A stretch of 63,061 bases of DNA, the filler included, from Platydemus manokwari (Eukaryota): NCBI GenBank assembly GCA_037951405.1. It is 5 parts of 5 records of this genome, joined end to end, with 100 filler letters (N's around TTAATTAATTAA, not from the genome) between each part and the next. Parts side by side here need not be neighbours in the genome. Positions count along the whole stretch, not along the records: positions 38,207 to 53,886 come from JBBMOY011255874.1; 4 more parts are not named here. The stretch is one strand, 5' to 3'. The stretch's first letter is position 1. Each line of letters opens with the position of its first letter. The notes beneath the pieces were generated by a model that had not been told where the DNA came from, did not search any database, and saw nothing but the letters and a program-made list of their open reading frames with translations. The translations under genes and the position numbers were made by a program. This document shows positions 38,207 through 47,553 of this stretch, one piece after another.

Positions 38207-39289
38207 AAATTTAATTTCGTTTTTGTATTAAGCACCAAAAAGTTAAATAAAAAACTATCAAAGCTAGTTGCATTACAAGAACTATAATAAAATCAAAAAA
38301 CAGCACATTCATACTGTTATAATAGATGTGCATAATCAATTAAGTAATTATTTGAAGATTATCGTAAAGATAAATATTTTTCTTCAAAATAAATTAAGTT
38401 GTAATTAATCTTATTAAATATTTTAGGCATATTACCAATGGATTACAATCGATTATAAGTTATGTACCAAAGTAAAATAATAAGTGGATTTATGATAAAT
38501 CTTGTAATTAATGCTGATTATATCATTAGAGGTATCTTATAATCATTGCTCAATGAAGGCTCCAAACTTTAATACATGGGACTAGAGAATGCTTAGACTT
38601 CTGATGTAACAAGTAATGAATAATTATTTAATAAAAGTAAAATTATTCTAAATCCTAAACTTAAATATTCGTGTGAATTATCAAGTAATATAAGCACCGA
38701 TAAGAAAGTATTTAGAATGTTCTTGACAAACTGTTTATGTAATGCATAAAGTAATCCTAAATATTTTATTGCGAAAACATTTTTAAATTTAATTCAAATA
38801 AATAGATATTGATATCTAGTGTTCCGAAATGTTGCTTAAACACATGATAGCTCAAAACAAGCCTAATAACTAATATTCGGTATAAAATCAAAGATTAGTA
38901 AATGCAATTAAGAGTATACTACAATTGATACTTAGTATAGTAAGCACCATAATTAAATTTCAAGACGATTAACAGATACTTTTAAATTTATAAATATTAA
39001 AAAATTAACAAATATCAATTCAAAATCTAAAACTTTCATAAAACTAAAATTAGCAAAATCCTGAAATAGACAAAACCAAAGTAACTTACAAGACAAAATA
39101 TAATGCAAAATCCAAGACAAAATAATAGATAAAAATAAACAATGAAAAATACAGTTTCACGTTTAATTTTAAAAAATTACAATTCCATAGCCAAACAGAT
39201 TAATATTACAAATCAAACAAATCTTGCAACAAGAAACAAATTATAATGTAATTAAAAATAAATGATTTATTAATATACAAAATAAAATA

Positions 39290-39913
39290 TTAAAAGGGTT
39301 GGGAACTTATAAAGCCTTTATCTCGTAGAAGATCTTTAACAATATTTTTCACAGTATTCAACTTTTTCCTCATTTCAAGCATGTCAGTTTTCGCATTAAC
39401 CATTTCTAAAGCTGATTTATTCAATTCTTCTTCTAATTTAGATTTATTCATTTTCTGTTTTTGTCTATAACGAAAAGCTGCATCACTATTACTAGCTTTT
39501 TTTTCATTACATATTTCACTATAAAAATTTGATTGTGTATCAAAGTCTTCAAAAAAGGCATCTACATGTTTGCGTTTTCGTTTGTTCGAAGTCTGATGGA
39601 TATATTTATATTCAGTACAAGGCGATGAGGAATCAATTTCGGAAAAAGTTCCGTTAAAAAGATCGTTAAAGTCATTAGGATCAGGCAAGGGCGCTTGACT
39701 AAGTTCTTCAATAAGCTGTGTTAATAGGGCTTCATTGAACTCACTAAAATCATCTGGTAAGTCATAGGATTGAAGGGACAATGACGAAGAGTTAGCTTCA
39801 TCCTCACAACATTCAATAATATTTTCATCATTGTTTGGATAATAATCATGTGATCCATATTTGGAAAGTTTTGGATCTGCGTCCAAAAGTAAATAATCGA
39901 TGTTTTCGAGCAT
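39290..39913 (-). CDS. atf4: ATF4/ATF5-like bZIP transcription factor, 207 aa
   Basis: First in-frame ATG at 39913 (MLENIDYLL...). Acidic N-terminal region; basic region EKKASNSDAAFRYRQKQK (ATF4: KKMEQNKTAATRYRQKKR) followed by a C-terminal zipper; ATF4-type uORF leader. Confidence 0.8.
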   Translation of the reverse strand: MLENIDYLLLDADPKLSKYGSHDYYPNNDENIIECCEDEANSSSLSLQSYDLPDDFSEFNEALLTQLIEELSQAPLPDPNDFNDLFNGTFSEIDSSSPCTEYKYIHQTSNKRKRKHVDAFFEDFDTQSNFYSEICNEKKASNSDAAFRYRQKQKMNKSKLEEELNKSALEMVNAKTDMLEMRKKLNTVKNIVKDLLRDKGFISSQPF

Positions 39914-39947
39914 TTGTATTTGAGGTTGTATATTGTAAGTTAGCCAT
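39846..39947 (-). promoter_or_regulatory. Inhibitory-type uORF2 overlapping the bZIP start out of frame (33 aa)
   Basis: ATG at 39947 (attATGg) reads MANLQYTTSNTNARKHRLFTFGRRSKTFQIWIT* and stops at 39846, inside the main CDS. Confidence 0.7.
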
Positions 39948-40048
39948 AATGAAACTAGACAAAAAACATTTAAAAGAAATTGAAATGATAGTAAATTATT
40001 ACTTATTTGGGAGCGCTTTCGCACTATTAGCAAAAATAGGTATATAAA

Positions 40049-40063
40049 CTATTTCATCATCAT
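40049..40063 (-). promoter_or_regulatory. Short uORF1 (MMMK*) in the putative leader of the ATF4-like gene
   Basis: ATG ATG ATG AAA TAG on the minus strand upstream of uORF2; a candidate 48-nt GT-AG intron (40002-39955) lies between them. Confidence 0.55.
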
Positions 40064-41339
40064 TACGAAACAAAAGTTTGAAAAACAATAATGAAACTAA
40101 ATCAATATGAAGAAACAAACATTGTTTTTTTAATAAAAATTATTTTTGAAATTTTTAAATAGTTTGTTTTTGCAAAAGATAAATAATTTTTACCGATATA
40201 AATAAGATGCAAATAGAATAATGTTCTGAAAATTATTTTATATTTTATTCATATTTTAATAATTATTTAACTTTAGAAATCGAAATCGATTAGCTTCAAA
40301 CTGTGTTTACTACTTAAATAATTTTTGTAAATAATTTTAAAAATGCAAATATAAATTTTGATGTAACTGTTTGAATAAAAAATTTATGATGGAATAATCT
40401 ATCAACTTTTGCAATTTTCCTCGAGTTTTATTAAAGACTCAGAATTAAATATTTTCAATCCTTAACAATATGTCAATTCATGTGTCGATAAATTATCCAA
40501 CTTTGTGTTTAAATTGACGGGATATCTAAAAGTTAAAACAGCTACGTGAATATTACTATTTTTGTAATTATTGGATAAGTTCTGATATCGTGATTTTAAT
40601 GTTTTCTATATAGTCATCTAATAAGCTGCCAATAATCATAGAGGTCTGAAAATTTATTTCTTGTACAACCATTTCTTGTACCATTACATTATTCTAACTT
40701 TAAATTACGAAATAATTTACTTAACTAAAAACTCAATATAAATATTTGGATGAAAACTAAAATTGTTTTGTTATTTAAAGATTCCGTACGTAAACCTTGA
40801 TAACTTGAAAATTTATGCAACTATTATAGAACGATTCCATGATTAATCAACCCATCAATCAACCCCACAATGAATCTTCTCCACAGATTAAGTCTCATAT
40901 ACAGCTAATATCTAATTTAAACTCCTCAGTCAAGCAGAGTTTAGGGCAAAATGAAGATGAAGAAATGATAAAATACACTTAAAAACATAACAACAAATAA
41001 ATTAATTACTCACTGGACTTCGAGTCAAGGTGAAAAACCAAACTAAACGCGATCAATAACAATCTATTTTGAGCTGCAACATTATGTGTACAAAAAGTAC
41101 ACACCATCAATACTAGGTAAAGTCAAAATAACGAATTTTTCATGGACGACATACAATTTTAGATTTCCATGAATATTTTACTGTATTCGCATAAACTCTA
41201 GTCATCCTTGTTGAGATAGATGACATCCAGAAGCCTAAACAAACGTTATTCGTTCAAAAACTGATTCATTATAGCCAATTACTTTTTACAATCTTAGCAT
41301 ATTTGGTTGTCGCTATTATTCATTTAATTTATATATAAT

Positions 41340-41850
41340 TTATTAAATCAATCGTTGTTATTTTTTAATTTGGTTTTCATTCAAAGCTTTCTTAATCTTC
41401 AGATTATGTTGACATCCACATACTGATTGCACTAGTTAATTTTTGAAACATATGTTGTTTCCTTTTCGTTTTTCTCAAATATATTATTGGTATTTAAATC
41501 ACATTAATTTAGATTTACAACATAGAGAACTATCATGAATCATAAATCGGCCTCTTCTAAATAAGTATCATCATTTGAAGATTTCATTTCAAGTATTCTT
41601 CAATTGTCAAAATAGATACATAAAATGTTCCCCCACCTAAATCAAAGACCAGATCATTTTGTTCAGTTCCTACTTTCTTATCCAACCCATTCGCAATTGA
41701 AGTAACGGTGGGTTGACATTCAATCCACTTATTTCACCGGAATCTTTTGTTGCTTGTATTTCATTATCATTGTAATAAACAGGTATACTCATTATTGCAT
41801 CTTTTACGGTTTCTCTAAATATGCTTCAAATATTTCTTCATTTTTTTCTT
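41340..41850 (-). pseudogene. HSP70 pseudogene fragment (ATPase domain)
   Basis: Reads, with frameshifts, KMK.IFEAYL / [33 protein letters not shown] / [13 protein letters not shown] / [14 protein letters not shown] / [11 protein letters not shown] / DTYLEE, co-linear with HSP70 [26 protein letters not shown]...[15 protein letters not shown]. Confidence 0.8.
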
Positions 41851-44012
41851 CTGATAAGATTGTTTTATTATCACCCCTACATTATTGAGTGACTTTCTGG
41901 ATCTTCTCCTCAATCTTCTGGAGAAAGTAATATTCAATAACCAACGGCATGGATTGGCAGCATGTTTGGGTCCAGACATTTCTGATTCTTTGAGGACTAG
42001 CTCTTATTTAGAACATACATGGGATTAAAATAACTAATATTTTGTGTCTTTCTATGAATATTCCACGTAAAATTTTGGAATATTTCAAACTGCTGGGATT
42101 TCATAACCTAACTAAATTCAGTAAAATCAATTTTTACCCACCCTATTATGCTTTTGCATTTGATCAAGATTTTCCAATTTTTTCTGATATGGCTAATTTT
42201 TATTTAAAATTGTATAAAGGATACTGCCGAAAGGATGACGGGCTTAATCATGCTCCCAGTTCCAGGCGAAACTCGAGCAAAATTTTTTTAGAAAAAGTTG
42301 AAATTTTAAACTTATCTCACAGTGCAAGCCTCGGTATAGAAGGCATCAATGTTCCCTTAATAATAAGTAAGTAAGTCTGCAACGATAATGAGTCAAATTA
42401 TGCTCATAGTCCCATCGAAAACTCACATAAGGAAGGTTATTCCATCAATAATAACCATTCCGGGCCCTCTAAGTCAAGCTCTCGGTCTGAAAAATGGTTA
42501 CTCAACGATCAAATATCCCCAATACGATCTTAAATATATCATTAGAACTCAGACAATTCGATAACAATCAATATAAACGCAAACGATTATAAGAATGGAA
42601 TGCCGGACGTTTCCAAACTTAATAAAAGCGATTGTAAAAGTGACCGACTCTTAAGCCCCAGTCTCGTAAACCGAAGATAACAATATGACTGAATCATATT
42701 CTCCGGTCAAAGAGACCGACTCTAAAAAAATTCAAATGAGATGAACCCACTGGATGAGAGTCAAAACCTGTAGCTACAAAAGGATATCAAAGTTGAATTC
42801 CAAGAAGTCAAACTCCCAACAGAGATCAAAGATAATAGTGAACCGATCCCAAACAATATTGACTTAAATGAGACCACCGAAATTACCAACGCAAATAGTG
42901 CGAAAAAAATCTTCGGTTAAGTCAACGTTGCAAAAGACCGACTATCGTCCGATGGCAGACATTACCATTCAACACGCCGAGAACTTCAAATGATTCGATC
43001 AAGAAATCGAGGCAAAATAACGACCCTGCTTTGAACCATCGAAACATATCACACAAGATTCGCCAACTATCCAATCTGAGATCAAAGGGAAGACTAAGAC
43101 TATGGGAAACTAAGCGAATCTCTGACAATAGTTCTTCTCAGTCAAAGAACAGTTCAAAGTTAAAATCACCGAAACTCGATGACATTTCCAAGTAAAAAAA
43201 ACAATCTGAGGAAATAAAGGCTGGGAAACTTATAATGACCAAGAGGTTTGGGTAAAGAAACAAACATCTCTACCCACCCGATGACTATGACTCTGGCGAT
43301 AGCCACGAGAGTGGTGACAGTTCCAGAGACTATGAATAGGATCCTGGTACATATGCCGCTATTGTTAATGAACGAATGAGATTCTACGAGTATTTCAGCA
43401 ACAAATCAATAGACTATCTTTTATATTTAGAGTTGATGACGAGAGAAATATTATGCCAGGTTTATCTGACTAACTCGCTAAGCAATGTATATAAATAGTA
43501 ATTATTAATTGTTGTTTGTTGTCTTTCTTTATTTGAGTTTTATATTTTAATATTGTTTGCCATTACATAGCCATTTTTTCTTCCTTTTTATGATCTGTTA
43601 AAATGAATTTAAATTTGTTTATTATCATGAATTTTTCATTCAGCTCATGCCCCCCTCATATGTATAGCTAGTTAATACATTCTGGAAATTTAAAATTAAA
43701 TTTAAACTTCAGTTGATGGGTTTTTTGTCAAAAGATTGAAATGAGTTCAATAATTTAATTAAATAATTTTCATACGAAAGGTTTATAAGGAGATTGAATG
43801 TTTTAATTAATTGAGAGCCTCAGCAAGTTTATTTTGCGTAATCAACTTTTACAGTGTTAAAGCATTAGAGCGATATGGTATCATTAATAGAACAGAATAT
43901 GATAATAATAATGATCATAACTCAAAATAATAATATTATAATAGAATCAGCTTATAAAAATAATACGAAAAAACTTATTTTATTTTATCAAGGTTAATTA
44001 TTAGAAAGATCT

Positions 44013-46665
44013 TTATAAATCCAAATTCATGTAATGGCCGAATAAATCTGGATAATTGAATATTTCCAGGAAAGATATTTTGAAGTGCTTAGCAAAACCA
44101 TTCAGAGAAGTGGATTGAATAAGCTTGTAAGTTAATTCGCTGCAAATTTTCTACAACAACAATTTCAAATAGATAATTTAAATAAAGAGATGTTAAAATG
44201 GCTTACTTTAGTTGCTTCAGACGTATTGATAGTTTCAATAGTCTTGAAATTATGACGCTTAGCTAAATCAATGGTATATTTTTCGATAAAATATAGCAGT
44301 TGAATTGCAGAGGAGCTTTTCAAACCATTTGACAAAGCAACAATCAATACACAGAGTTTCGGAATTCTCAACTGATGCATTGTCCGGGGTTTGCAATAAT
44401 ACAAAAAACCTTGCAAAATATTTTCGGGATTGACTTCAAAATGTTCGTCTTCATTTTCCAGCATATAATTTGAACAGTCTTCTGACAACTGTACAGCCAG
44501 AATAGCATTAGATTTTAAATCTCTAATGCAAAACGAACAACGACTTTGTAATGCCCAATCATAGATCTCAGATACTACATCAACAAATACCTGAACCGAA
44601 ACATTAAGATATTTCACGAGAAGATCTTTAGTATAAAAATTCTTGACCAAAAATCCAATAATCTCATCTTTATATTCGCCCTCAATCGGTTCCACGATGA
44701 AATTATTGTTGATGAATTCAGTCAAGCTTTTTCTGGGGTGAATGTTACACACTGATGTCGATTGTAGTAAAATGGAATCGATTATGTCTCCAATAATGAA
44801 ATTATACAGAAAGACTTCTGTAGTACAAAAGAAACCCTTCCTATTAAGATCGGCAATGCAAATAACAATCGCTATTGAATCGCCTCCGATTTCGTAAAAA
44901 TTTGTCGACTCAGTTATATCATCACAATACTTAGCTAAATGTCGGACCAAAATGTGAAATATTAATTTTCGATTGGAAATTGAATCCGGAAATAAAGTTT
45001 CATCCAAATTAGCTTTTTGGAAGTCTTTGGTCAATCTTGAACGATTTTTTAAGGGTTTCGATTTCGTTTCTATAATTTTATTATTGAAAATAATCTTCGA
45101 TGCAATTGATGATAACAACTTTCTGTCGGGTTTCATTGACTGAGACTGCATTGGAATGCTGTCGATATATTCCAATCGGGGAAGAATGATTCCTGGTAAA
45201 GTTCTCAATAGATTATTTATAATCTCATTTTTTGCTTGGATTTTATTAATATTTTTATTTTTTAGAGACACAAACGAAACCAAATGGCTTTTGTCGTCGT
45301 TCATCAAATGAACAGTGAAGCAGTTTTCAACACCACAATGAAGCATCACCGCAGCAGTTACATCCTTCATGAAGACTTTCTTTCCATTTATTTTAACCAT
45401 GTCATCCATTCTTCCACAAATATATAATTTTTTATCATCGATAAAGCCAACATCTCCCGTTTCAAAAGAATGCCCACAATTCGGAGAAACATTTTCCCCA
45501 ACGACAATTACTTCTCCTTCATTTTCCAAGTCAGAACTGATTAATATCTTATTGTTTGATATTGGCAATCCAACCGACAAGAAGCCATTCTTTGAATGTT
45601 TATCTACATCCTCTAAAGTCATTAATATTTCACAACATACATCGCCACACACTTCAGTAGAGCCATATAGGTTCACCAGTCGGCAATTATTAATATTAAA
45701 ATCTTCAAAAAACCGCTTTGCAACTCGTGGAAATAGCATTTCTCCACTGGCGACGACAGTGGAAAGCGTAATCAAAGAATCCACTATCTCGGGGTTAACA
45801 TTAATTTGATTCATCCACTTTTGTAAAAGCGATGGAACTGTCAATAACCATGTTACCTTATATGTCTCTATTATTTTTGATAAATATATCATATCGCATG
45901 ATTGCACGGGGGAAACTATGACCATAGTTGCACCAGACAGCAAAGAACTCAAACATTCGACAATGTTATCGACAAACATGAAGTTTGTTCGATGACAAAT
46001 GACTTCATTGGTTTTATACGGAAGGTAACGCCATTGCCAAAATAAGCGGTTAAATATCTGACAGTTCGTCAAAGTCAAAACTTTTGGTGTACCAGAACTG
46101 CCTGATGTGGTTAAAATGACTACTGGATTATCTCGGGAATGAGGAACTAAGCGTTCATGATTTAAAATATTAGGACAGAAAATCCAATCAGAATTGACTA
46201 ATAAACTTTTCACTGGCATAACTTCAACTTCATTTTCTGTCTCAGAATCAAGTATAAGATCAATAAACGAGTTGTCGTGAATAATAAGAGATATGTTACA
46301 GCTTCTAATCATTTGTTTTAATTGGTCACTGTTTAAGCTGGTGGAAACCGGAACAATAACCAAACCGAGTTTGAGACAGGACAAAATTGTTATCAGTCGT
46401 TTGAAACCTTCATCTAAGAAAATGCCAACGTGGAAGTATTTCCAGTTCTTTTCGTTGGAATTGAAGAATTTCAATATATTTCTCGCAACGGTATTTGCCT
46501 GATTATTTAAGTCGTAAAATGTTATGCGACAATCATTATGAATAGCTGCGATATCATTTTCTTGGCCACTGGCTTTGGAATTCAGACAATGCATCTCGAA
46601 ATATGAGGCCAAATTATGACATTGATCGAATCGTTCAACTTTGCCAAACGAATATTGAGAATTAT
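44013..46665 (-). CDS. nrps: Ebony-like stand-alone non-ribosomal peptide synthetase (adenylation - thiolation - AANAT-like amine-selecting domain); putative beta-alanyl-monoamine synthetase
   Basis: Large exon 46665-44207, 56-nt intron, last exon 44150-44013 (KICSEL...HYMNLDL*). A-domain cores: TTSGSSGTPK, FVD, SGE, NLYGSTE, ETGD, GRMDDMVKING, KPDRKLL. Carrier domain NFYEIGGDSI (phosphopantetheinyl Ser). C-terminal domain with NFYTKDLL and NTSEATK (Ebony SFYxKADL, NTSPLTQ). True start codon unresolved. Confidence 0.9.
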
Positions 46666-47553
46666 CTACAAAAACAACCTTTATTAAGCATTAGAAAATT
46701 ATAAAATATAAAAAATGAATCTCCTTTTTGATTAAAACAATAAAAATGATTATTTCTTTCATGAATTGATTTATTAAAACAAATTTTGAAATAATTTCCT
46801 CTTTCAAGCGGGAAAACCACACTTCTTAAATGATATAAATACATTAATTTACTTGGTAAATTAGAAAAACAAGAAAATATAAAATACAGACGGCTGAACA
46901 GCAATATTTTAAGTATTCTTTTAAGCATTTCATTTTGTATCGATTATATTTTTTTAATTTCACTTGTAAAGTATTTTCTCCTTTTGGAAACCGCAGAAAA
47001 TTAGATATTTCATTGAACTCATACCGATACCGTCTCCGATAGATATCTACAATCTTCGTTATTTACTTATATTCCATTTCTGTAAGCATAAAACTTGATT
47101 TTAAAAATAATTTGACCGATAATTTTTCGAGAGGTTCGTCTGCTCTAAGAGTGGATATTAATTAATCAATGAGATCATTTTATTCATTCTCTGTATTTGT
47201 TTGTTATGAATTTAATTGAATAAAAAATATTTTTAAATTCACCTTCTCAGACGCGTTGGCCGTCATTTATTGGCTCAGATCATTTTTGCAGTTTTCGATA
47301 ATTCAAGTTATTCCATGACACTCATAAGAAACTTTAGCCTATTTGATTGATTAATTAAAAATTCCAAAAATCATTTTTGGACCTTACGAAAAATGAAATC
47401 AATAATTGTCTTTTTGGTTTCGCTCATACATGTGTATTGGGGTGGGGAGGGGGTTAAGAAAACAATTTTTAATAAAGAAACAGTACCGTACTTCAAGAGA
47501 TTTTGCATATTCGTATAAATATTTTAAAAATATGGATGACACTATTAGATATA

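What the first reader, a model, noticed from the sequence alone, without database searches (positions are those of the whole stretch)
39846..40063. ATF4-type two-uORF translational switch hidden by the ORF caller
The ORF track starts the gene at a TTG (40033), but the first ATG is at 39913. Upstream lie a 4-codon uORF1 (MMMK*) and a 33-aa uORF2 that overlaps the main start out of frame. A likely 48-nt leader intron removes another ATG. This is the delayed-reinitiation layout that makes vertebrate ATF4/ATF5 inducible by eIF2-alpha phosphorylation. Inference: the integrated-stress-response switch is conserved here despite a very divergent protein, and the triple ATG of uORF1 may ensure ribosome capture.
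Basis: partly seen in the sequence, partly recalled or inferred. Interest (0 to 1): 0.7.

Follow-up and report, generated by a model that had tools for sequence, protein, structure and literature searches.

The report
Conserved two-uORF leader on ATF4-like gene
A small, fast-evolving bZIP transcription-factor gene on the minus strand has the same leader layout that makes ATF4 stress-inducible (tiny upstream ORF, spliced leader intron, second upstream ORF overlapping the start codon), and two related species keep this layout base for base, so it is a real but already familiar kind of translational switch.

Summary
The main ORF starts at ATG 39913, not at the ORF caller's TTG 40033. uORF1 (MMMK*) lies at 40063..40049. 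A 33-codon uORF2 (39947..39846) overlaps the main start out of frame. A 48-nt GT..AG segment (40002..39955) holds the one other upstream ATG.

In this sequence alone the layout is only mildly unusual: 9 of 585 random ATGs in this AT-rich piece show it. The comparative evidence is decisive. The protein has only two detectable relatives among 1.8 billion representatives. One comes from two identical mRNA-like contigs that lack exactly the 48-nt segment. The other comes from a genomic contig with a 46-nt GT..AG intron at the same site.

After splicing, all three leaders contain only the two upstream ORFs, with identical geometry:
- uORF1 AUG to main AUG: 102 nt.
- uORF1 stop to uORF2 AUG: 53 nt.
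- uORF2 overlap with the main ORF: 68 nt.

Leader exon 1 is as conserved as the coding sequence, while the intron and both flanks are at background level.

The protein is a weak bZIP with ATF4's RYRQK basic-region motif. ATF4 orthology is not statistically shown, and stress inducibility is untested. I rate it a new member of a known kind.

The parts
39290..39913 (-). Main ORF, 207 aa, ATF4-like bZIP protein. The true start is ATG 39913 and the stop is TAA 39292..39290.
   Evidence: Full-length alignment (residues 1-204 to 1-209) to P0001 at E 2.9e-38 and to P0002.
39914..40033 (-). Spurious N-terminal extension from TTG 40033 produced by the mechanical ORF caller. It is leader sequence, not coding.
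   Evidence: The relatives have in-frame stops in the equivalent stretch. The extension runs through the intron and uORF2.
39320..39502 (-). Basic region and leucine zipper (residues 138-198). It has the N-x7-R-x9-L spacing, the motif NSDAAFRYRQKQK and a hydrophobic 3-4 repeat.
   Evidence: Pfam bZIP_2 E 0.019-0.026, 15 bits, below the 22.3-bit cut-off. NFIL3 bZIP E 0.017. AlphaFold models a single helix 143-198 with pLDDT 83-97. The block is invariant in all three species.
40003..40090 (-). Leader exon 1, taken from the start of the conserved block to the 5' splice site. It contains uORF1 and two small conserved hairpins. The exact TSS is unknown.
   Evidence: 77% identity to L003, against 50 +/- 8% for shuffles. 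The 200 nt upstream are at shuffle level. The equivalent stretch is contained in the mRNA-like contigs L001 and L002.
40075..40081 (-). Initiator-like TCAAACT (YYANWYY), kept as TCAAATT and TCAATTT in the relatives. It is a candidate TSS with A+1 at 40079.
Evidence: L002 begins 2 nt downstream of the equivalent A. This is a weak motif-level inference only.
40049..40063 (-). uORF1: ATG ATG ATG AAA TAG (MMMK*).
   Evidence: The relatives have ATG ACG AAA TAA or TAG (MTK*) at the aligned position.
40051..40071 (-). Predicted 7-bp hairpin (GUUUCGU / AUGAAAU) with the uORF1 AUG(s) in its loop.
   Evidence: Consensus fold of the three leaders. All pairs are kept, with one G-C to G-U change and no compensatory change. 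Energy is -4.2 kcal/mol, z -2.5. Weak evidence.
40012..40025 (-). Invariant 14-nt element AGUGC-GAAA-GCGCU: a 5-bp stem with a GNRA-type loop, between uORF1 and uORF2.
   Evidence: Identical in all three species within an otherwise diverged AT-rich leader. It folds in every prediction. No covariation is possible because nothing varies.
39955..40002 (-). Leader intron, 48 nt, GTAATA...TCTAG. It removes the upstream ATG at 39969.
   Evidence: An exact 48-nt gap in L001 and L002. A 46-nt GT..AG intron at the same site in L003. Intron sequence similarity is at shuffle level. The neighbouring gene has a 56-nt GT..AG intron.
39955..39969 (-). Intronic mini-ORF MFFV*, absent from the spliced leader.
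   Evidence: The L003 intron has no ATG.
39846..39947 (-). uORF2, 33 codons, with a strong start context (A at -3, G at +4). Its ATG lies 34 nt upstream of the main ATG, so it reads in a different frame. It overlaps the main ATG and ends 68 nt inside the main ORF.
   Evidence: The relatives have 34 codons, the same context and the same TGA position. A 3-nt indel preserves the frame relation.
39266..39271 (-). Candidate poly(A) signal AATAAA, 19 nt after the stop codon.
   Evidence: Read. Not tested.

Best explanation
The minus-strand gene 39913..39290 encodes a small, rapidly diverging bZIP transcription factor of the ATF4 type. Its mRNA leader is a compact ATF4/GCN4-style delayed-reinitiation switch.

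Proposed mechanism:
1. Ribosomes translate the 3-4-codon uORF1 (40063..40049), and the 40S subunit resumes scanning.
2. The 48-nt leader intron (40002..39955) has been spliced out, so the resumed scan covers 53 nt.
3. When ternary complex is plentiful, ribosomes reinitiate at the strong-context uORF2 AUG (39947). They then terminate 68 nt past the main AUG, so the bZIP protein is not made.
4. When eIF2-alpha is phosphorylated, a fraction of 40S subunits reacquire ternary complex only after passing the uORF2 AUG. These initiate at the main AUG 34 nt further on.

Shown here: the sequence features, the intron, the inclusion of both uORFs in mRNA-like contigs of a relative, and purifying selection on the layout and its spacing.

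Inferred: reinitiation behaviour, stress dependence and ATF4 orthology.
For: - Features at the stated coordinates.
- Only two relatives were found among 1.84 billion representatives and the word-index database. They give contigs L001, L002 and L003.
- L001 and L002 are identical over 968 nt, come from two samples, and lack exactly the 48-nt GT..AG segment. L003 is genomic and has a 46-nt GT..AG intron at that site.
- In all three spliced leaders the only upstream ATGs are uORF1 and uORF2. uORF1 AUG to main AUG is 102 nt, uORF1 stop to uORF2 AUG is 53 nt, and uORF2 ends 68 nt into the main ORF. The uORF1 stop varies TAG/TAA while remaining a stop. A 3-nt indel keeps uORF2 out of frame.
- Leader exon 1 is 77% identical (shuffles 50 +/- 8) against 70% for the CDS. 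The upstream 200 nt, the intron and the 3' flank are at shuffle level.
- Chance of the layout is 1.5% per random ATG here. Retention under 20-30% random substitution is 5-11%.
- bZIP character: N-x7-R-x9-L spacing, a long helix 143-198 with pLDDT 83-97, and weak Pfam and NFIL3 matches.
- RYRQK is ATF4's DNA-binding motif (292RYRQKKR298, PMC4075335). Nine of the 11 listed papers (12 held the string) are about ATF4.
- The same leader design is documented for mammalian ATF4, Drosophila crc and C. elegans atf-4 (PMC5666893; PMC8857226; PMC10998230; PMC8514241).
Against: - There are no RNA, TSS or ribosome data for this organism. The only run holding the sequence is DNA contigs.
- That L001 and L002 are mRNA is inferred from the missing intron and from where the contigs end, not from a library label.
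- ATF4 orthology is not supported statistically. Pfam bZIP scores are below cut-off, a profile of the three proteins does not recover ATF4 among solved structures, NFIL3 is the best bZIP match, and no known ATF4 appears in the large searches.
- The interval between the uORF2 AUG and the main AUG is only 34-37 nt. From my recollection it is roughly 100 nt in mammals, so the window for late reacquisition is narrow and the quantitative behaviour may differ.
- Only three species, representing two deep lineages, are available.
Confidence: 0.65

Rival explanations
1. The uORFs are real and conserved but act as a constitutive brake. uORF2 simply lowers main-ORF translation through capture and leaky scanning, with no eIF2-alpha-dependent switching.
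For: The distance from the uORF2 AUG to the main AUG is very short at 34-37 nt, which leaves little room for delayed reacquisition of ternary complex. No stress data exist.
Against: A pure brake needs no conserved, very short uORF1 at a fixed 53-nt distance. The conserved pairing of a 3-4-codon uORF1 with an overlapping uORF2 is the specific signature of reinitiation-based control as described for ATF4, crc and atf-4.
Confidence: 0.2
2. Leader conservation reflects other elements, and the two uORFs are carried along incidentally. Candidates are the invariant AGUGC-GAAA-GCGCU hairpin, the hairpin around uORF1, or a DNA-level bZIP site (TGATGAAAT in the window, TGACGAAAT in the relatives).
For: The 14-nt GC-rich element is invariant, and a 7-bp stem encloses the uORF1 AUG in all three species. 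The uORF1 sequence resembles a C/EBP-ATF composite site; that consensus comes from my own knowledge and was not tested.
Against: The hairpins are weak (-4 to -6 kcal/mol), show no covariation, and the whole leader folds no better than shuffles (z 0.5 to -0.9). These elements would not explain the open 33-34-codon frame ending at the same TGA, the frame-preserving 3-nt indel, the TAG/TAA stop swap, or the absence of any other upstream ATG. Under 20-30% random substitution the layout survives in only 5-11% of simulations.
Confidence: 0.08
3. The upstream ATGs are chance occurrences in AT-rich intergenic DNA. The transcript starts downstream of them, or the relatives' contigs are genomic and the 48-nt difference is an ordinary indel.
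For: About 2 upstream ATGs per 102 nt are expected here, and 1.5% of random ATGs show the layout. The library type of L001 and L002 is not on record.
Against: Conservation begins about 27 nt upstream of uORF1 and is as high as in the CDS, while the flanks and the intron are at background. The indel has exact GT..AG ends in two species, with unrelated sequence and lengths of 48 and 46 nt, which implies a transcribed exon upstream of it. Spacing is identical in three species.
Confidence: 0.04
4. uORF2 encodes a functional conserved micropeptide (a peptide-dependent uORF) rather than, or in addition to, acting by position.
For: The uORF2 peptides share about half their residues between the window and the relatives, including M-x-x-L-x-Y-T in the non-overlapping part and a C-terminal IWIT.
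Against: Two thirds of uORF2 overlaps the conserved N-terminus of the main protein, so its conservation is confounded. Identity is similar in both frames. The non-overlapping part is only 11-12 codons with few shared residues.
Confidence: 0.05

Closest known systems
Vertebrate ATF4 (and ATF5) 5' leader: delayed reinitiation with uORF1 and an overlapping uORF2
   Same: A very short 5'-proximal uORF is followed by a last uORF that overlaps the main start codon out of frame. The downstream protein is a bZIP with the RYRQK basic-region motif (PMC5666893; PMC4075335).
   Different: This leader is much more compact: a 53-nt spacer, 34-37 nt from the uORF2 AUG to the main AUG, a 33-34-codon uORF2 and a 68-nt overlap. 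PMC5666893 gives an 83-nt overlap for mammals. The protein is 207 aa and has no statistically detectable similarity to ATF4 outside the basic motif. A spliced leader intron lies between the two uORFs. Function is untested.
Invertebrate ATF4 homologues: Drosophila cryptocephal (crc) and C. elegans atf-4 (formerly atf-5)
   Same: Both are small invertebrate bZIP genes with regulatory uORF leaders. C. elegans atf-4 has two 5' UTR uORFs whose deletion raises reporter translation (PMC8857226). crc has a similar regulatory leader with an overlapping uORF (PMC10998230; PMC8514241).
   Different: No detectable sequence similarity to either was found in the searches. The organism is unidentified. Spacing details could not be compared because no crc or atf-4 sequences were available through the tools.
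Yeast GCN4 and fungal CpcA/cpc-1 uORF control
   Same: The logic is the same: reinitiation after a short uORF, tuned by the supply of eIF2 ternary complex, on a bZIP mRNA (PMC10998230).
   Different: From my own knowledge, GCN4 uses four short non-overlapping uORFs and its basic region is of the AARRSR type, not RYRQK. Here the inhibitory uORF overlaps the main ORF, as in ATF4.
Drosophila Xrp1 leader
   Same: It is a bZIP whose last uORF overlaps the main ORF in another frame and which is induced downstream of PERK (PMC8514241).
   Different: The Xrp1 uORFs are long (124 and 288 codons), and uORF2 is homologous to main-ORF sequence in other species. Here the uORFs are 3-4 and 33-34 codons.

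Membership tests
ATF4-type two-uORF leader (delayed reinitiation) | A very short 5'-proximal uORF (2-4 codons) that terminates well upstream of the next AUG | tested here: met
   MMMK* at 40063..40049, and MTK* in both relatives. The spacer after splicing is 53 nt in all three.
ATF4-type two-uORF leader (delayed reinitiation) | The last uORF starts upstream of the main AUG, is out of frame with it, and terminates inside the main ORF | tested here: met
   uORF2 runs 39947..39846. Its ATG is 34 nt (37 nt in the relatives) upstream of the main ATG, so the frames differ, and the overlap is 68 nt in all three species.
ATF4-type two-uORF leader (delayed reinitiation) | Both uORFs lie in the mature mRNA (TSS upstream of uORF1) | tested here: inconclusive
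   Met in the relative: the intron-less contigs L001 and L002 contain both uORFs. For the window's organism there is only indirect support, namely a conserved exon 1 upstream of a GT..AG intron. No RNA run was found.
ATF4-type two-uORF leader (delayed reinitiation) | The layout is conserved between species beyond background | tested here: met
   Spacing is identical in three species and there are no extra upstream ATGs. The leader is as conserved as the CDS while the flanks and intron are at shuffle level.
ATF4-type two-uORF leader (delayed reinitiation) | Main-ORF translation is induced by eIF2-alpha phosphorylation and depends on uORF1 and uORF2 | not testable with these tools
   This needs reporters or ribosome profiling with and without stress.
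bZIP transcription factors | A recognised bZIP domain at a curated threshold | tested here: not met
   Pfam bZIP_2 scores 15-15.5 bits against a cut-off of 22.3, and bZIP_1 scores 14 against 27.6.
bZIP transcription factors | A basic region with N-x7-R, the first zipper Leu nine residues later, a heptad hydrophobic repeat and one continuous helix | tested here: met
   The N142...R150...L160 spacing was read from the sequence. The block is invariant in three species. AlphaFold models a helix 143-198 with pLDDT 83-97. It aligns to the NFIL3 bZIP at E 0.017.
ATF4/ATF5 subfamily | The basic-region signature AAxRYRQKK, with Tyr where most bZIPs have Cys or Ser | tested here: met
   The motif here is AAFRYRQKQK, invariant in the three proteins. 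ATF4's DNA-binding site is 292RYRQKKR298 (PMC4075335). Nine of the 11 listed papers containing the string concern ATF4. The match is to a motif only.
ATF4/ATF5 subfamily | Significant overall or domain sequence similarity to known ATF4 proteins | tested here: not met
   No ATF4 chain was recovered from solved structures with the protein, its bZIP part, its basic region or a 3-sequence profile at E up to 10. Only two unnamed relatives were found in the large protein libraries.
ATF4/ATF5 subfamily | A beta-TrCP degron DSGxxxS (motif recalled from my own knowledge) | tested here: not met
   None of the three proteins contains a DSG string.

The most novel reading that the evidence does not exclude
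The leader is a miniaturised, rigidly spaced variant of the ATF4 switch in which conserved RNA elements do part of the work. One candidate is a hairpin that holds the uORF1 AUG in its loop. Another is an invariant GNRA-capped hairpin between the uORFs that slows scanning, making a 53-nt spacer behave like a longer one. The uORF1 sequence might also double as a C/EBP-ATF-like site for autoregulation by the encoded bZIP. The gene would belong to an under-sampled lineage whose ATF4 has diverged beyond sequence recognition.
Probability: 0.12. Interest if true: 0.55.

Novelty: new member of a known kind. Interest (0 to 1): 0.35.

Why it matters
The finding corrects the gene model. The start is ATG 39913, the leader has a 48-nt intron, and the TTG extension is spurious. 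It also identifies the likely integrated-stress-response effector of an unidentified, very AT-rich eukaryote, in a case where homology searches fail to name the protein. It shows that leader architecture can outlast recognisable protein similarity, which makes uORF layout a useful marker for finding ATF4-type genes in divergent lineages. The exactly conserved, unusually compact spacing (53 nt, 34-37 nt, 68 nt) gives a natural minimal version of the switch for testing how distance sets reinitiation timing. The mechanism itself is well known, so the gain is in annotation and comparison rather than in concept.

Tried and rejected
- RNA evidence in this organism. The look-up of sequencing runs returned a single run of unknown kind. 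Laid on the region, it gives continuous DNA contigs with no joints, so it says nothing about TSS or splicing.
- Word-index protein search with the single protein found nothing. It succeeded only with a two-sequence profile.
- The search for related loci in metagenome contigs found nothing. A degenerate DNA pattern for AAFRYRQKQK returned only the contig already held (L005 = L001), so there are no further relatives in that collection.
- ATF4 identity by sequence. Four solved-structure searches (whole protein, bZIP part, basic region, 3-sequence profile) never returned ATF4; the best match was NFIL3. The Pfam bZIP score is below cut-off.
- A Foldseek search of the AlphaFold model against PDB gave no meaningful hit, as expected for one long helix plus disorder.
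- N-terminal extension or stop-codon readthrough. In the window, uORF1 is in frame with the main ORF and its TAG is the only in-frame stop before 39913. I rejected this reading because the relatives have further in-frame stops there.
- The leader as a strongly structured RNA: rejected, with z-scores of 0.5 to -0.9. Rfam has no match in the piece.
- Taxon identification failed. Exact-protein look-ups found nothing. The neighbouring gene's best named relatives are a tapeworm and a Penicillium protein, both at 24% identity. The sample accessions appear in no paper.
- The bacterial promoter and terminator scan is irrelevant to a eukaryotic gene.
Full report
**The observation**

The gene lies on the minus strand of an extremely AT-rich piece (GC 0.23-0.38). 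The mechanical ORF list starts a 247-aa frame at TTG 40033, but the first in-frame ATG is 39913, which gives 207 aa ending at TAA 39292..39290.

Reading upstream on the minus strand I find the following:
- ATG ATG ATG AAA TAG at 40063..40049 (MMMK*).
- A 4-codon MFFV* ORF starting at 39969.
- A 33-codon ORF from ATG 39947 to TGA 39848..39846. Its ATG lies 34 nt upstream of the main ATG, so it reads in a different frame, and it runs 68 nt into the main ORF.
- A segment 40002..39955 that begins GT, ends AG, is 48 nt long and contains the 39969 ATG.

Every coordinate in the finding is therefore correct.

**Is it more than chance?**

Taken alone, only modestly. ATG density in the piece is 0.019 per nt, so about two upstream ATGs are expected in 102 nt. 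I treated each of 585 ATGs in the piece (both strands) as a mock start. Nine of them (1.5%) show short uORF(s) followed by a last uORF that overlaps out of frame by at least 30 nt. With the protein sequence held fixed and synonymous codons resampled, the overlapping frame stays open as far as observed in 4% of trials for the window and 10-11% for the relatives.

**Relatives**

The protein is nearly an orphan. The word-index search found nothing. An exhaustive phmmer scan of 1.84 billion representatives found one protein, P0001 (211 aa, 50% identity, E 2.9e-38, aligned residues 1-204 to 1-209). A two-sequence profile added P0002 (213 aa). P0001 and P0002 are 76% identical to each other.

- P0001 is encoded on two contigs of 1074 and 968 nt from different samples (L001 from JGI, L002 from Logan). 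They are identical over their 968-nt overlap.
- P0002 is encoded on a 1674-nt assembled contig, L003, with 561 nt of upstream sequence.
- Two further scans of metagenome contigs gave no additional relatives.

**The intron**

MAFFT aligns the window leader to L001 and L002 with one clean 48-column gap that coincides exactly with GT(40002)...AG(39955). L003 carries at the same position a 46-nt segment (L003 472..517) that also starts GT and ends AG.

The two intron sequences are no more alike than shuffled sequence (63% against 59 +/- 8%). The neighbouring NRPS-like gene in the window has a 56-nt GT..AG intron (44206..44151), defined by homology to P0003, so introns of about 50 nt are normal in this genome.

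The simplest reading is that L001 and L002 are spliced mRNA and that the window and L003 are genomic copies with a positionally conserved leader intron. L001's 3' end falls just after an ATTAAA, within a 3' UTR that is homologous to L003's downstream sequence. That fits an mRNA contig but does not prove it.

**Conservation of the layout**

After removing the introns, each of the three leaders has upstream ATGs at only two sites:

| Feature | Window | L001/L002 | L003 |
|---|---|---|---|
| uORF1 | MMMK*, stop TAG | MTK*, stop TAA | MTK*, stop TAG |
| uORF2 length | 33 codons | 34 codons | 34 codons |
| uORF2 start context | A at -3, G at +4 | A at -3, G at +4 | A at -3, G at +4 |
| First uORF1 AUG to main AUG | 102 nt | 102 nt | 102 nt |
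| uORF1 stop to uORF2 AUG | 53 nt | 53 nt | 53 nt |
| uORF2 end, nt into main ORF | 68 | 68 | 68 |
| uORF2 AUG to main AUG | 34 nt | 37 nt | 37 nt |

The uORF2 stop is the same TGA in all three, embedded in the codons for the conserved YGS(H/L)D. The 34 versus 37 nt difference is a 3-nt indel, so the frame relation is preserved.

Segment by segment, window against L003:

| Segment | Identity | Shuffle mean +/- sd |
|---|---|---|
| Leader exon 1 | 77% | 50 +/- 8 |
| CDS | 70% | 57 +/- 4 |
| 200 nt upstream | 63% | 60 +/- 4 |
| Intron | 63% | 59 +/- 8 |
| 3' flank | 61% | 61 +/- 4 |

Conservation therefore switches on about 27 nt upstream of uORF1 and off in the intron, as expected for an exon under selection.

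Suppose the leader were constrained for unrelated reasons at the observed 20-30% divergence. The full layout would then survive in only 5-11% of simulations. Under neutrality it would return to the 1.5% background, without the exact spacing.

**The start codon**

Both homologues align to the window protein from Met1. Their upstream in-frame sequence contains stops. The TTG-40033 extension is thus an artefact of the ORF caller and runs through the intron and uORF2.

In the window, uORF1 happens to be in frame with the main ORF, and its TAG is the only stop in that frame before 39913. Because this is not true of the relatives, I discard a readthrough or extension reading.

**The protein**

AlphaFold, run with the three-sequence alignment, gives a disordered acidic N-terminal half, a short conserved helix (residues 56-73) and one long helix (143-198) with pLDDT 83-97.

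The helix carries N142-x7-R150-x9-L160 followed by a 3-4 hydrophobic repeat, which is bZIP geometry. Sequence statistics are weak:
- Pfam bZIP_2 scores 15 bits against a cut-off of 22.3.
- The best solved-structure match is the NFIL3 bZIP (E 0.017).
- ATF4 was never recovered.

What points to ATF4 is the invariant AAFRYRQKQK. ATF4's DNA-binding site is 292RYRQKKR298 (PMC4075335). A full-text search for the string RYRQK found 12 papers and listed 11, of which nine are about ATF4.

I therefore call the protein ATF4-like. I do not file it as a demonstrated ATF4 family member. The kingdom of the organism is also unresolved. The neighbouring gene's best named relatives are a tapeworm protein and a Penicillium protein, both at 24% identity.

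**Mechanism**

The architecture matches the textbook ATF4 design: a very short uORF1 that allows the 40S to resume scanning, and a last uORF that overlaps the main start out of frame. The literature describes this for three systems:
- Mammals, where the two uORFs are said to be conserved from invertebrates to mammals and uORF2 overlaps the main ORF by 83 nt (PMC5666893).
- C. elegans atf-4, which has two uORFs whose deletion raises reporter translation, with induction on translation stress (PMC8857226).
- Drosophila crc (PMC10998230; PMC8514241).

I infer the same delayed-reinitiation logic here. The version here is compact, with 53 nt to uORF2 and a further 34-37 nt to the main AUG. This narrows the window in which late-reloading 40S subunits can choose the main AUG. 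Because the spacing is exactly conserved, it is probably tuned.

None of the dynamic steps is shown. The only sequencing run that holds this DNA is genomic.

**Secondary elements**

Two small hairpins are predicted in all three leaders:
- GUUUCGU / A(C/U)GAAAU, enclosing the uORF1 AUG (window 40071..40051).
- The invariant AGUGC-GAAA-GCGCU (40025..40012).

Both appear in the consensus fold and the single-sequence folds. They are weak (-4 to -6 kcal/mol) and show no compensatory changes, and the whole leader folds no better than shuffles. I report them as conserved sequence blocks of unknown role.

The uORF1 region also reads TGATGAAAT (TGACGAAAT in the relatives). From my own knowledge this resembles a C/EBP-ATF composite site. 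I did not test this.

The triple ATG is specific to the window's lineage. If the TSS is at the conserved Inr-like TCAAACT (A at 40079), uORF1 would lie only 16 nt from the cap, and extra AUGs could help capture ribosomes. This is speculation.

**Verdict**

The gene-model corrections and the leader intron are well supported. The two-uORF layout is under purifying selection. The mechanism and the ATF4 orthology remain inferences (overall confidence 0.65). This is a new member of a well-known kind of translational switch, found in a lineage where the protein has diverged almost beyond recognition. It is useful for annotation and comparative work but is not conceptually new.

Noticed in passing
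window 41587-41792 (minus): Two short ORF fragments in different frames match Pfam HSP70 (E 3e-5 and 7e-6, profile positions 139-163 and 182-207). This looks like a decayed Hsp70 pseudogene about 1.5 kb upstream of the bZIP gene.
   Followed up: partly
window 44016-46687 (minus): NRPS-like gene with AMP-binding and PP-binding domains. The ORF caller's 815-aa frame from TTG 46612 is incomplete. The homologue P0003 (877 aa, 59% identity) aligns from 46687 and continues past a 56-nt GT..AG intron (44206..44151) into a second exon at 44144..44016. A likely splice acceptor near 46657 suggests a further 5' exon. The best named relatives are a tapeworm and a Penicillium protein at 24% identity.
   Followed up: partly
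window 40012-40025 (minus): A 14-nt GC-rich element, AGTGCGAAAGCGCT, is invariant in all three species inside a diverged AT-rich leader. It folds as a 5-bp stem with a GAAA loop. Its role is unknown.
   Followed up: partly
window 40051-40071 (minus): An inverted repeat GTTTCGT...A(T/C)GAAAT encloses the uORF1 start codon and is kept in all three species. The same bases include TGATGAAAT (TGACGAAAT in the relatives), which resembles a C/EBP-ATF-type bZIP site, so autoregulation is possible. The consensus is recalled from my own knowledge and was not tested.
   Followed up: no
window 40049-40063 and 39914-40048 (minus): In the window, uORF1 is in frame with the main ORF, and its TAG is the only in-frame stop between it and ATG 39913, both before and after splicing. 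The relatives have additional in-frame stops, so this looks accidental.
   Followed up: yes
L001 1-15: The mRNA-like contig of the relative begins with a run of 15 T that has no counterpart in the window or in L003. It may be a genomic T-run or a library or assembly artefact, so its 5' end should not be read as a TSS.
   Followed up: no
window 42207-43206: A local GC rise to 0.38 with strong AT skew (0.26), plus unannotated ORFs of 68-110 aa with no Pfam match (42042-42374 on the plus strand, 42922-43128 on the minus strand). It may be a repeat or a transposon remnant.
   Followed up: no
tool behaviour: the search for related loci with the two-protein alignment reported no relative in metagenome contigs. 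A DNA pattern scan then showed that the contig Ga0247628_1030519, which encodes P0001, is in that collection. A blank from that tool is therefore not evidence of absence.
   Followed up: yes
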